Below are positions 47,644 to 63,490 of a DNA stretch of 64,000 nucleotides, piece by piece (position 1 is the stretch's first letter; each line of letters begins with the position of its first letter). The DNA is taken from assembly GCF_033153115.1 (NCBI RefSeq), contig NW_026889783.1, positions 2,976,001 through 3,040,000 on the forward strand. Direction: 5' to 3'. Both the position numbers and the translations under genes were made by a program. This DNA is from Saccostrea echinata (Eukaryota). The notes beneath the pieces were generated by a model. The model was not told where the DNA came from, made no database searches, and saw only the letters and a program-made list of their open reading frames with translations.

Positions 47644-50600
47644 ATGAAAATGAAAGTAGGATTTTTCGATGTGGCATTCCTTGCGCAGATTTTTTCTTGT
47701 GTGTGTTTTCATGCTGACGATAGGGACTATTATGCCGTGCTAAATGTAAAAAGGTCTGCAAAGCCATTGGATATTAAAAAAGCGTACAAAGTCATAATGT
47801 TCAAGCTCCATCCAGATAAAAACAAGGTAAGTAGGAAGTCTAGTATACATGTATATATATACTCTTATGCTGGTTGTGCTTATATATAAATCTGATAGTT
47901 TTAGATTTACATCTTGATTAATGTCTTCTTAATTTGCATCAACAGAGACATGAATTCAAACACCAATTATTAATAAGTTATTTAAAATTGATAAAAATTC
48001 TAAATTTTATGAAAACTAATTCAACAACCTGAACAAGGGCACCACAAAGCGGAGCATCCCCTCGCCAAAGAGCATATCATTCTCGACATGAATTATTACC
48101 TGATAAACTCCCGTCACCCACTCACTCACTCACTCATCCACATACACAAAAGCACATTTCTATATCCCCTCCAATGTAAACATTGCGAGGGGATAAAAAA
48201 GTTTTTTTGTAAGGGAAACACAAATTTTAGGTTTTATAGTTCACTCGGGTGACTTATTGCTATCTGTTGAATTGAACATATTTTATTGACAAAGTCAAAA
48301 GGATCGGACACAAGTTCAGAAACTTAGATAGTCTTCTCCTAATACAACATTTTGTTAAAATTGCCAAAATAAAAAACATATATTAACATATGGTCTACTA
48401 CATATACGTAGTTATAGAAAGAAAAAAAAAAGTTTTAAGTGTACAAGTATAACTTGAATTGGTAAGAAGAAAATTTTTTAAAAAGTAAGCTTATTTTGAA
48501 AAACGACCACATTCATTTAAGAAAGTTTGAATGGTTTTGAAAAGTTCAACATTTTGTTCAATAGTAAGAGAATCATCTCCCCATAACATTAAATGTACAT
48601 CTATAACATATAAATAATTAAATGATAAAAGCTTATTCATTAAGGAATTCCTTGCTTTTACATAATATTTACAAGCAAAAAACAAATGATATGCATCTTC
48701 TAGTAGTCCACAAGAACAATTAGGACTGGTTATTAGGTTACAGCGATATAAGTCAGACTTTAAAATACAATTATGTCTTAATCTTGTATGAATTATGTTC
48801 AAAAACCTTTTTCCATATGAAAAATATTTCTGAGGTTTTGCAATACTGTTGTGCAGATAGTTTTTAAAAATTTTGATAGAAGTTGCCTCCCTTGTTTTAA
48901 GACTAAGGGAATTTCACTTTCTAACTGTATCAGGAATAAATGATTTATTATATAGTTCTAATCTGTATTTTGGCAAAGAATAATTTAAGAAATTCCTGGT
49001 AGTGTATCCTGAAATATTGCCTCTTGTATCAGGTACTAAATTTTGTAAATAATTAGGTACTAAATTATTGTGCATTTTATACATTGTTATTAGTTTTGCT
49101 CTGTTTCTTCTGTGTTCCAATGGTTCCCAACCTGTTTCCAAATATAATGAATTTCTTGAAGCAATAATTGTAAGCCCAGTAACTATTCTTGCAGCAAATA
49201 ATTGTACTTTTTCAAGATTCTCAATGTCTGTTTTTGTGCATCCAGACCAAACTTCAACAGCATATTCAAGTTGTGGTCTAATAAAAGATATATACATCTG
49301 GGATAGAATATCTCTTGACACAGTAAATTTTAGTTTTTTAAGAAGCCCCAGTTTTTTGTATGCTTTCTTTATAATGATATCAATATGATCAGACCATCCT
49401 AAGTTGGACGACAGAAGTATCCCAAGATGTTTGTGTTCTGTAACATATTCCAATTGGCAATTGTCAAAATATAATGTAGGAAACTGCTGCATATTTTTCG
49501 AATTAAAAAATACGGCTTTGGTTTTCTGTGGGTTAAATTTCAATAACCATTTCTTTGACCATTCATCTAGTATTCTAAGATCATGGTTAAGATTTTGTTC
49601 AATATGATTAATATTATCTGAACATTGTTGTAAGGAATTATCATCAGCATATAATCTACAAACGGATATCATATTTTCAGCCACATCATTTACATACAGT
49701 AAAAATAACAAAGGACCAAGTACTGAGCCCTGAGGAACTCCAGCTTTTACATGTCCTACAGAGGAAAATTGATTTCTATACATGACTTGTTGTGTTCTAT
49801 TGCTTAAATAACTATCAAACCAATCTAGCATATCACCATTGATTCCATACATTTTTAGTTTGTAAATTAAGCCTTTATGCCAGACTCTATCAAATGCCTT
49901 GGATAAATCACAAAACACCATACAACAGAATTTACCTTCATCAATACTTTTTACTATAGAGTGGTATGTTTCTAAAAGTTGATATACGCATTGTAGGATT
50001 AAATCATTAAGGAGTTTTAAATCTGCTTGCTTATAGTTCCAAATTTTACGTTTATATGCCGCATTAACATTGGTATTCTGGTGAATATATATATAAGTTG
50101 CTTTATGATCACTAACTGTATTACTAACTTTTAATGTTCCAGAATCATGTACATGTATATTGTCACTAATAATGATAGGATCTATAAGGGTTTCTGTATT
50201 GCAAGTAATTCTTGTAGGTTCATGTATGATATTTGTTAATCTACAGCTGTTCATTATTGTATGAATCTCATGTGAGTTGTTAACTTTTAAGAAATCAGTG
50301 TTAAGGTCACCAAGTACTACAATATTGCTGGAGATATCACAAGCTTTTTCAAAGGACCAAGATAGTTTTTGCCAAAAGACACTATTAGTGTGTGGTGGAC
50401 GATAAATACAGCATATAAGTAGATTTCCCTTTACTTGTGGTATTTCTATCCAAATGAGTTCAGTATTAATTGGTTCTAAATCTTCTCTTCGACTAGCCTT
50501 AATTAAATTTGAAACATAAATCATTACACCTCCACCATAAGAATTGCGATCTTTTCTAAAAATATTCTTAAAACCTTCTATGAACAAACTTTCATTTGTA

Positions 50601-63300: not shown

Positions 63301-63490
63301 CCAGAATGTATATATTATAAAAAAAATTTACTGCAAAGTTTTTATTCCTAGATTTAGCAATTTTGTCCTTGGTGAAAATCATGTGACTTCTGCAGAAATT
63401 GAGGAGCATCGACATAGTTCTCGGATTTACCCACAATTGGATCCAATTGCTACCGACTCAGAATCTTCATCAGAAAATGATGAAATTTAA
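47644..63490 (+). CDS. Signal peptide + DnaJ (J) domain + multi-TM + NEMP/TMEM194-like protein, ~556 aa when reconstructed; exon 2 disrupted by a TE in this haplotype
   Basis: Phase-compatible exons 47644-47826, 54464-54496 + 55802-56033, 57667-57730, 59025-59127, 62061-62812, 63033-63197, 63352-63490. J-domain DYYAVLNV...DIKKAYK...LHPDKNK|CDPHANEKTAF/LNKAYGILKDERKRQDY. The C-terminal LSNAEYVMEG...LNQLRLDC...AWRM...KRFSNFVLGENHVTSAEIEEH resembles the conserved NEMP tail. AATAAA at ~63538. Confidence 0.75.
48269..51727 (-). mobile_element. CR1/L2-group LINE, 5'-truncated within ORF1 and internally deleted, inserted in a HINE-like element in intron 1
   Basis: 11-bp TSD TGCTATCTGTT (48258-48268, 51728-51738); ORF1 tail 51727-51533 (SCWTYDGRIYAK); APE-RT ORF2; AATAAA and short ttcaa tail. 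Confidence 0.9.
48491..50992 (-). pseudogene. LINE ORF2 (2A-like peptide, AP endonuclease, reverse transcriptase), defective
   Basis: LHLNIRSI, FSETHL, LGDLN, SDH (APE); DLSKAFDRV, GVPQGSVLGPLLF, YADD (RT). In-frame deletion junction near 49988. TGA at 48914-48916, with the frame continuing to 48491. Confidence 0.92.
54497..55801 (+). mobile_element. Young Helentron-associated (HINE-type) element with 166-bp Cg170-like repeats, inserted in exon 2 of the J-domain gene
   Basis: Start ttttagctcacctgagccgaaggctc; (gtcc/gtct)n microsatellite; near-identical 166-bp units (55113, 55279, 55445); subterminal IR ctcaggtgagc; 3' hairpin ggcccatgggcc; T-run target. Related older copies at ~53885-54410 (-), 60150-61160 and 63551-64000. 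Confidence 0.9.
57845..58595 (+). mobile_element. HINE-like element with ~160-bp repeats (intronic)
   Basis: ctcctacagtttt...aacttggcaca...gatgaacagtgttg repeated about three times. Confidence 0.6.
59366..60117. mobile_element. Kolobok-like non-autonomous element (intronic)
   Basis: TIR GGG(A/G)GCCGACTGGGGTTTT; TTAA on both sides. Confidence 0.8.

What the first reader, a model, noticed from the sequence alone, without database searches (positions are those of the whole stretch)
47644..63490. Apparent J-domain-NEMP (TMEM194) fusion: a candidate nuclear-envelope Hsp70 co-chaperone
Seen: seven phase-compatible exons give a signal peptide, an HPD J-domain, several TM helices and a soluble tail. 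From my recall of NEMP1, the tail aligns with LTEEEY..QGEVET..ALEELREFC...AWK...KRFADFVEGSSHLT..E, and LKYKP...YFLQQALAFYY echoes YKYGP...WTLQL. Known: NEMP proteins are inner nuclear membrane proteins whose tail binds BAF/Ran; lumenal J-proteins recruit BiP. Inference: a lumenal J-domain replaces the normal NEMP N-terminus, which could couple perinuclear BiP to lamina or chromatin. I do not know this architecture from characterised proteins.
Basis: partly seen in the sequence, partly recalled or inferred. Interest (0 to 1): 0.82.

Follow-up and report, generated by a model that had tools for sequence, protein, structure and literature searches.

The report
Oyster J-domain–NEMP fusion, transposon-split here
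This oyster gene really does join an Hsp70-recruiting J-domain to the tail of a nuclear-envelope protein (NEMP), an uncharacterised combination seen so far only in oysters, but in this copy a mobile element has landed inside the J-domain coding exon.

Summary
The window is Saccostrea echinata. The finding is gene LOC133199687, whose RefSeq product XP_061191543.1 (545 aa) matches the window at 100%. The fusion is real. Exon 1 alone scores 39.6 bits on Pfam DnaJ, and the whole protein passes the Pfam NEMP cut-off (34.2 against 28.7 bits). Relatives in Magallana gigas and in two unnamed transcript-like assemblies carry both domains with higher scores. NEMP similarity is confined to the C-terminal part of the profile (region B plus the last helix). 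The membrane core gives no NEMP hit.

The RefSeq model has eight exons, not seven. The large exon runs to 62812, not to about 62404. The second J-domain exon is split between two adjacent codons by a roughly 1.3-kb Helentron-type element (HINE), which starts with an in-frame TAG. No canonical (GT-AG) or annotated splice keeps helix III whole (11 or 14 residues lost).

The family was found only in oysters and evolves fast (30–43% identity between genera). Lumenal BiP recruitment at the nuclear envelope is a reasonable inference but untested. Verdict: a new variant of known kinds, of moderate interest.

The parts
47644..47826 (+). Exon 1. It holds the start codon, a signal-peptide-like hydrophobic segment, and J-domain helices I-II through HPDKNK. 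It ends in phase 0; donor GT at 47827-28.
   Evidence: DNA read. Pfam DnaJ 39.6 bits, profile positions 1-33. 100% match to P0001 residues 1-61.
54464..54496 (+). Left piece of the split second J-domain exon: CDPHANEKTAF (loop after HPD and start of helix III). Acceptor AG at 54462-63. An in-frame TAG at 54497-99 follows directly. The RefSeq model uses only 54464-54490 and then a GC donor.
   Evidence: Matches P0001 residues 62-70. Corresponds to residues 59-69 of C. virginica P0012.
54497..55801 (+). Inserted Helentron-type non-autonomous element (HINE). Its parts are a 5' sub-terminal repeat AGCTCACCTGAG with its complement, a GTCC microsatellite (54545-54601), 5.7 copies of a 166-bp repeat (54772-55713), and a 3' sub-terminal repeat followed by the palindrome GGCCCATGGGCC. 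The ends lie in T-runs, so the breakpoint is uncertain by a few bases.
   Evidence: Tandem repeats. Other copies in the window and shared termini. The structure matches the HINE description in PMC7492417.
55802..56033 (+). Right piece of the split exon: LNKAYGILKDERKRQDYN (rest of helix III and helix IV), a linker, and a hydrophobic segment. It ends in phase 1; donor GT at 56034-35. The RefSeq acceptor lies before 55829. A canonical acceptor AG at 55809-10 would start the exon at 55811.
   Evidence: DNA read. BLASTP to C. virginica P0012 residues 70-105, E 1e-9. tblastn with P0004 residues 67-94.
57667..57730 (+). Exon of 64 nt (VKLNSFQCGTFLAVTASFVS), the start of the conserved membrane block.
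   Evidence: AG and GT sites read. 100% match to P0001 residues 139-160.
59025..59127 (+). Exon of 103 nt (SPVILFILLWIFVV...KNIR), hydrophobic helices.
   Evidence: Matches P0001 and P0004 by tblastn.
62061..62812 (+). Large exon of 250 codons. It holds three or four hydrophobic helices, then a variable Cys/Trp-rich helical spacer whose end aligns with the last helix of the NEMP profile.
   Evidence: DNA read. 100% match to P0001 residues 195-444. This exon alone gives no NEMP hit.
63033..63197 (+). Exon holding the first half of the NEMP region-B-like tail (LSNAEYVMEGRFYT...NAWR...NVKR).
   Evidence: Pfam NEMP E 0.041, profile positions 188-234. Lies within the above-cut-off hit of P0001 residues 431-512.
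63352..63490 (+). Last exon: the second half of the region-B-like tail (FSNFVLGENHVT...EEH), an acidic and serine-rich end, and the stop codon TAA at 63488-90.
63538..63543 (+). AATAAA, a likely polyadenylation signal 48 nt after the stop codon.
   Evidence: Read directly. Its function was not tested.

Best explanation
This is a genuine gene specific to the oyster lineage. Its product has four parts in order: an N-terminal signal peptide, a J-domain, a fast-evolving multi-helix membrane block with a variable helical spacer, and a C-terminal tail homologous to NEMP region B. In vertebrate NEMP1, region B is the nucleoplasmic part that binds RanGTP and BAF.

Proposed mechanism, all inferred. The signal peptide places the J-domain in the ER and perinuclear lumen. 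There its HPD motif would stimulate the lumenal Hsp70 BiP. The NEMP-like tail would sit on the other side of the membrane and tether the protein to nuclear-side partners. The result would resemble ERdj1, but anchored at the inner nuclear membrane.

In this particular S. echinata sequence a HINE transposon sits exactly between two codons of helix III of the J-domain. The message must then do one of three things: end at the element's TAG, skip the left piece (14 residues lost), or use the annotated GC-AG intron (11 residues lost). This allele therefore most likely makes a protein with a crippled J-domain and an intact NEMP-like part.
For: Shown:
- The window matches RefSeq XP_061191543.1 at 100%.
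- Pfam DnaJ is over its cut-off on exon 1 and on P0001.
- Pfam NEMP is over its 28.7-bit cut-off on P0001 (34.2), P0004 (47.2), P0029 (45.8), P0030 (41.4) and P0007 (44.7).
- DnaJ matches the full profile (1-63 of 63) and HPD is conserved in relatives from Magallana gigas, Crassostrea virginica and two unnamed assemblies.
- Both domains lie on single contigs of 2.0-4.5 kb.
- Every relative that includes the N-terminus (P0029's model starts within it) has a short hydrophobic stretch right before the J-domain.
- For the insertion: TAG follows directly after CDPHANEKTAF. The two exon pieces match C. virginica residues 59-69 and 70-105 with no residue missing. The element has the HINE anatomy and three more copies in the window.
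- P0001 matches only DnaJ profile positions 1-43 and shows an 11-column gap in helix III.

From the literature:
- ERdj1 is a membrane protein with a lumenal J-domain and a cytosolic tail (PMC8342575).
Against: - NEMP similarity covers only the C-terminal 40-58% of the profile. The membrane core (region A) is not detectably NEMP-like.
- The number of membrane helices between J-domain and tail is unclear, at 5 to 7 hydrophobic segments. The AlphaFold model is poor (mean pLDDT 50.9). Opposite-side placement of J-domain and tail is therefore not established.
- There are no data on localisation, BiP, Ran or BAF.
- Sequence divergence is high (30-43% between genera), so region-B partners may not be conserved.
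- Whether the HINE insertion is fixed or carried by a single haplotype, and how it is spliced, could not be checked.
Confidence: 0.6

Rival explanations
1. It is a general ER-membrane J-protein of the ERdj1 or Sec63 kind, not a nuclear-envelope protein. The region-B-like tail is cytosolic and has taken on another role, so the NEMP resemblance reflects ancestry rather than function.
For: The membrane core gives no NEMP (region A) signal. In Xenopus Nemp1, region A is what colocalises the protein with lamin (PMC4422613). The family also diverges fast.
Against: The region-B match is the best-conserved non-J part of the protein across genera. That argues for a retained partner on the tail side.
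Confidence: 0.25
2. In S. echinata the locus is a dying gene. The HINE insertion causes premature termination and mRNA decay, and the RefSeq model is a computational rescue.
For: An in-frame TAG lies at the junction. There is no usable GT donor before it in the left piece, since the only GT (54465-66) lies at its second and third bases. The annotated donor is a poor GC site. P0001 lacks 11 residues of helix III.
Against: All other exons are intact, including a 250-codon open exon. A canonical GT-AG splice from exon 1 to 55811 keeps the frame. The insertion could also be a polymorphism in the sequenced animal.
Confidence: 0.12
3. It is an annotation chimera. A small J-protein gene and a separate NEMP-like gene have been merged by gene prediction.
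For: Some database models hold only one half. C. virginica X1 lacks the tail, and the O. edulis and C. virginica X2 models lack the J-domain.
Against: Both Pfam domains occur in one protein in three independent sources. Two of these sit on contigs of 2.0-4.5 kb that can only be intronless. Exon phases connect throughout. The nearest long ORF upstream is an F-box/LRR ORF on the other strand that ends at 37901.
Confidence: 0.03

Closest known systems
NEMP1/NEMP2 (TMEM194A/B; Pfam PF10225, formerly DUF2215)
   Same: Both have a signal peptide followed by a multi-helix membrane block. The C-terminal tail matches the NEMP profile above the curated cut-off, over positions 151-248 or so, which is the region-B side.
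   Different: The N-terminal lumenal domain is replaced by a J-domain. The conserved membrane block (region A) is not recognisable. A variable 90-170-residue Cys/Trp-rich spacer, duplicated in M. gigas, lies before the tail. Found only in oysters.
ERdj1 / DNAJC1 / MTJ1
   Same: Both are membrane proteins with a signal sequence, a lumenal J-domain near the N-terminus and a functional domain on the other side of the membrane (PMC8342575). This is the closest analogue in how the protein would work.
   Different: ERdj1 has one membrane span and cytosolic SANT/Myb domains that bind ribosomes. This protein has several spans, a NEMP-like tail and no SANT hit. There is no sequence relationship outside the J-domain.
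Cg_HINE / 'pearl' Helentron non-autonomous elements of oysters (for the insertion)
   Same: The insert has sub-terminal inverted repeats, a GTCC microsatellite, a central 166-bp tandem array and a 3' palindrome. It is inserted in a T-run with no evident target duplication (PMC7492417).
   Different: This copy sits inside a coding exon. The cited paper reports copies in non-coding parts of genes.

Membership tests
J-domain proteins (Pfam DnaJ PF00226) | Profile match above the curated cut-off (27.8 bits) | tested here: met
   Exon 1 alone scores 39.6 bits and P0001 scores 41.1 bits. Relatives score 63-71 bits.
J-domain proteins (Pfam DnaJ PF00226) | His-Pro-Asp motif between helices II and III | tested here: met
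   HPDKNK ends exon 1. HPD is kept in all five sequences that include this region.
J-domain proteins (Pfam DnaJ PF00226) | Complete four-helix domain (helices III and IV contiguous with HPD) | tested here: not met
   For this window's copy, P0001 matches profile positions 1-43 of 63 only. The coding sequence for the rest is present but split by the HINE insertion, with a TAG at the junction. Relatives match 1-63 of 63.
J-domain proteins (Pfam DnaJ PF00226) | Stimulates the ATPase of an Hsp70 partner | not testable with these tools
   This needs a biochemical assay.
NEMP (Pfam PF10225) | Profile match above the curated cut-off (28.7 bits) | tested here: met
   P0001 34.2, P0004 47.2, P0029 45.8, P0030 41.4 and P0007 44.7 bits. 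Exon 6 alone scores only 14 bits, E 0.041.
NEMP (Pfam PF10225) | Conserved C-terminal region B | tested here: met
   The matches cover profile positions 151/167-248 of 249, which lie in exons 63033-63197 and 63352-63490 and the end of the large exon.
NEMP (Pfam PF10225) | Conserved transmembrane region A | tested here: inconclusive
   The membrane exon gives no NEMP hit at E up to 1. A full-library HMMER search with it found no canonical NEMP. One relative extends the match to profile position 104. No canonical NEMP sequence was in hand for a profile-profile test.
NEMP (Pfam PF10225) | Signal peptide, five membrane spans, N-terminus lumenal and C-terminus nucleoplasmic | tested here: inconclusive
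   An N-terminal hydrophobic stretch is present. Five to seven hydrophobic segments are conserved, and one further segment is specific to Saccostrea. The AlphaFold model is too poor to decide.
NEMP (Pfam PF10225) | Inner-nuclear-membrane localisation; binding of RanGTP, BAF or lamin | not testable with these tools
   These properties are known for vertebrate Nemp1 only (PMC4422613).
ERdj1/DNAJC1 | Cytosolic SANT/Myb domains after a single membrane span | tested here: not met
   No SANT/Myb hit at E up to 1 on P0001 and P0004, or at E up to 0.1 on P0029 and P0030. Several hydrophobic segments are present.
HINE (Helentron non-autonomous element), for the insert | 5' sub-terminal repeat with internal complement, microsatellite, central tandem repeats, 3' sub-terminal repeat with palindrome, T-rich target without duplication | tested here: met
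   compared against the description in PMC7492417. No sequence comparison with named Cg_HINE consensus sequences was made.

The most novel reading that the evidence does not exclude
Oysters have built an inner-nuclear-membrane-anchored lumenal J-protein by swapping the lumenal head of a NEMP for a J-domain. BiP activity in the perinuclear space would then be coupled to Ran, BAF or lamina contacts on the nuclear side. This would be a chaperone counterpart of the torsin-LAP1 arrangement (the comparison is from my own knowledge). Its fast evolution would reflect a role in the germline nuclear envelope like that of NEMP in other animals.
Probability: 0.25. Interest if true: 0.75.

Novelty: new variant of a known kind. 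Interest (0 to 1): 0.55.

Why it matters
NEMP proteins keep germline nuclei mechanically sound and are needed for fertility across animals (PMC7455189). The role of their lumenal part is poorly understood. A natural variant carrying a J-domain in that position suggests that the perinuclear lumen side can host chaperone recruitment, and it offers a testable handle on BiP function at the nuclear envelope.

The proteins are in public databases only as 'uncharacterized'. No paper found here links NEMP with a J-domain.

The HINE insertion is also a clean example of a Helentron-type element landing inside a coding exon between two codons, with annotation then 'intronising' it.

Limits: the family is confined to oysters as far as could be seen, the NEMP similarity is partial, and the function is wholly inferred.

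Tried and rejected
1. Word search with the large exon, given as a region of the 301-aa ORF: no hits. The length window probably excluded the 545-aa product.
2. Word search with the tail of P0004, meant to pull canonical NEMPs or J-NEMP proteins outside oysters: it returned only the query itself and two close relatives. The existence of a separate canonical oyster NEMP and a profile-profile test of the membrane core therefore remain undone.
3. Profile word search with the family alignment: it was swamped by generic J-domain proteins beyond the oyster family.
4. AlphaFold2 on P0004 with a 12-sequence alignment: mean pLDDT 50.9, with only the J-domain confident. No fold search was run, because a low-confidence model gives meaningless matches.
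5. PDB sequence search: only J-domains, no NEMP structure.
The contigs behind P0004 and P0029 and the genomic loci of the other oysters could not be inspected.
7. A candidate exon at 58562-58620 was considered and rejected. It is phase-compatible with the exon before it but not with the exon at 59025, and it is absent from P0001.
8. It is phase-compatible, but the database model does not use it and it would delete 136 open, partly conserved codons.
9. An acceptor at 55753/55754 that would read through TE-derived sequence was rejected because it has no pyrimidine tract and lies in element sequence.
I never joined the exons into one sequence for a search. Whole-protein results come from database proteins returned by the tools.
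Full report
**Origin and gene model**

A full-library HMMER search with the large exon (window 62061-62810) returned a 545-aa protein, P0001. It is 100% identical over all 250 query residues. P0001 is RefSeq XP_061191543.1, 'uncharacterized protein LOC133199687' of the oyster Saccostrea echinata.

I combined tblastn of P0001 on the window with direct reading of the splice sites. This gives eight coding exons:

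| Exon | Coordinates | Note |
|---|---|---|
| 1 | 47644-47826 | |
| 2 | 54464-54490 | |
| 3 | 55829-56033 | |
| 4 | 57667-57730 | |
| 5 | 59025-59127 | |
| 6 | 62061-62812 | |
| 7 | 63033-63197 | |
| 8 | 63352-63490 | stop TAA at 63488-90 |

The phases fit by hand and the lengths add up to 545 codons plus the stop. Exons were searched by reference, and whole-protein results come from database proteins that the tools returned.

The nearest long upstream ORF is an F-box/LRR ORF on the opposite strand at 35691-37901. The ATG at 47644 is therefore a credible gene start.

**Check of the observation**

- Exon 1 alone scores 39.6 bits on Pfam DnaJ (cut-off 27.8) and ends in HPDKNK.
- Several hydrophobic helices follow.

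- The large exon does not stop near 62404. The frame stays open to 62852 and P0001 uses it up to the GT donor at 62813.
- An 11-codon piece of the J-domain at 54464-54496 was apparently missed.
- The resulting length is 545 aa, not 556 aa.

**Is it a J-domain–NEMP fusion?**

Yes, at the level of Pfam profiles.

| Protein | Source | Pfam DnaJ | Pfam NEMP (cut-off 28.7 bits) |
|---|---|---|---|
| P0001 (545 aa) | S. echinata, this window | 41.1 bits | 34.2 bits; residues 431-512 on profile 167-248 of 249 |
| P0004 (486 aa) | unnamed Logan assembly | full length, 63-68 bits | 47.2 bits |
| P0029 (488 aa) | unnamed Logan assembly | full length, 63-68 bits | 45.8 bits; profile 104-248 |
| P0030 (563 aa) | Magallana gigas | full length, 63-68 bits | 41.4 bits |
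| P0007 | Ostrea edulis; model lacks the N-terminus | none | 44.7 bits |
| P0010 | Crassostrea virginica; model lacks the tail | 71 bits | none |

P0004 and P0029 lie whole on contigs of 2.0-4.5 kb. The Saccostrea gene spans 16 kb with seven introns. I therefore take those contigs for assembled transcripts, which would mean one mRNA carries both domains.

**Limits of the NEMP relationship**

The match covers only the C-terminal side of the profile. By position this is the region-B side. [quoted passage not shown]

The membrane exon gives no NEMP hit. Searching it against 1.84 billion representatives found only six clusters. The four that carry a source organism name are all from oysters, and no canonical NEMP appeared.

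I could not obtain a canonical NEMP sequence through the tools, so two tests were not done:

- a profile-profile comparison of the membrane block;
- a check for a separate canonical oyster NEMP.

Between the membrane block and the tail lies a variable Cys/Trp-rich helical spacer. In M. gigas it carries a tandem duplication of about 75 residues.

Identity between genera is only 30-43%, so the family evolves quickly.

**The transposon in the J-domain**

In the relatives the sequence runs HPD[KR]N-x, then an 11-residue stretch, then LNEAY/INEAY and the rest of helix III. In the window these parts are separated.

- The 11 residues CDPHANEKTAF are encoded at 54464-54496, behind a good acceptor.
- An in-frame TAG follows them directly.
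- LNKAYGILKDERKRQDYN resumes at 55802.
- The right piece aligns with C. virginica P0012 from residue 70 (E 1e-9). The left piece corresponds to residues 59-69 of the same protein. No residue is missing between the two pieces.

The roughly 1.3 kb in between has the anatomy of an oyster HINE, a Helentron non-autonomous element:

- a 5' sub-terminal repeat AGCTCACCTGAG with its internal complement;
- a GTCC microsatellite at 54545-54601;
- 5.7 copies of a 166-bp repeat at 54772-55713;
- a 3' sub-terminal repeat followed by the palindrome GGCCCATGGGCC;
- ends that lie in T-runs, with no evident target duplication.

This rests and the description in PMC7492417. Three more copies with the same termini lie at 53942-54411 (minus strand), 60149-61159 and from 63551 onward.

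The left piece offers no usable GT donor ahead of the TAG; its only GT, at 54465-66, would leave a single coding base. The possible outcomes are:

1. Read-through into the element and termination at the TAG.
2. The RefSeq solution, a GC-AG intron at 54491-55828. It removes 11 residues of helix III. This shows as the gap and as a DnaJ match limited to profile positions 1-43.
3. It removes 14 residues.

Helix III packs against helix II to form the core of the J-domain (established knowledge). I therefore infer that this allele's J-domain is impaired. All other exons are intact, so the insertion is probably recent or polymorphic. I could not test that.

**Likely mechanism**

Every relative whose model includes the N-terminus has a hydrophobic stretch of about 16-21 residues directly before the J-domain. 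P0029's model starts within this stretch. Small residues in the stretch suit signal-peptidase cleavage (my reading, no predictor was run). This is the layout of ER-lumenal J-proteins. ERdj1 is the membrane-bound example, with a lumenal J-domain and a cytosolic tail (PMC8342575).

I infer the following.

- The J-domain faces the ER and perinuclear lumen and works with BiP.
- The region-B-like tail, if it lies on the other side of the membrane, provides nuclear-side contacts.

The number of membrane passes is unresolved, at five to seven hydrophobic segments. One further segment is seen only in Saccostrea and weakly in C. virginica. The AlphaFold model was poor (mean pLDDT 50.9), so I ran no fold search. 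The PDB holds only J-domain relatives.

**Rival explanations**

| Rival | My probability |
|---|---|
| General ER J-protein whose NEMP-like tail has drifted to another role | about 0.25 |
| Decaying gene in S. echinata | about 0.12 |
| Annotation chimera of two genes | about 0.03, given the transcript-like contigs and the independent models |

**Novelty and verdict**

The proteins are in the databases as uncharacterised entries, with both Pfam domains precomputed. I found no paper that connects NEMP with a J-domain. The large survey of J-protein architectures does not mention NEMP in its main text, and its supplements were not held.

I rate this a new variant of known kinds:

- a real, conserved domain combination restricted to oysters;
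- a plausible but untested role as a nuclear-envelope co-chaperone;
- in this window, a copy whose J-domain is split by a transposon.

Interest: 0.55.

Noticed in passing
window 53942-54411 (-), 60149-61159 (+), 63551 to at least 63967 (+): Three further copies of the same HINE-type element lie within 10 kb. They share the left end TTTTTAGCTCACCTGA, and the one complete copy (60149-61159) also shares the right end CCTCTTGTT. One sits 60 nt after the gene's stop codon, just past the AATAAA signal. The minus-strand copy and the exon insert form an inverted pair around the 92-bp stretch that holds the small J-domain exon piece.
   Followed up: partly
window 48914-50992 (-), with 48491-48802 (-): A non-LTR retrotransposon ORF of 692 aa lies inside intron 1. 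It has an endonuclease domain (Exo_endo_phos, E 6.8e-10) and a reverse transcriptase domain (RVT_1, E 1.7e-22). A further 103-aa ORF lies downstream on the same strand.
   Followed up: partly
P0030 (Magallana gigas) against P0029; O. edulis P0002 against P0007; M. gigas P0031: The spacer before the NEMP-like tail carries a tandem duplication of about 75 residues in the M. gigas model. O. edulis isoform X2 lacks exactly the 54 residues that correspond to the exon at 63033-63197. M. gigas isoform X2 skips ahead and appears to read the tail out of frame.
   Followed up: no
window 35691-37901 (-): A single-exon ORF of 736 aa has an N-terminal F-box and leucine-rich repeats. It is the nearest long ORF upstream.
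   Followed up: partly
window 19832-21823 (+): An uninterrupted ORF of 663 aa ends in a HECT ubiquitin-ligase domain (E 1e-7).
   Followed up: partly
window 6227-7898: A GC-rich block (47% against about 32% around it) of near-perfect tandem repeats is open in several frames on both strands. One frame is Ser/Pro-rich, with a unit of about 38 residues.
   Followed up: no
window 25724-26620 (-): Two adjacent ORFs match an integrase core domain (rva_4, E 4e-13 and 8e-5). This looks like a broken mobile-element integrase.
   Followed up: partly
window 55940-56033 (P0001 residues 118-138): The hydrophobic segment AVLGMQWVLGIAANIVYIM that follows the J-domain in Saccostrea has no counterpart in the Magallana-type relatives and only a weak one in C. 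virginica. The number of membrane passes, and so possibly the topology, may differ between genera.
   Followed up: partly
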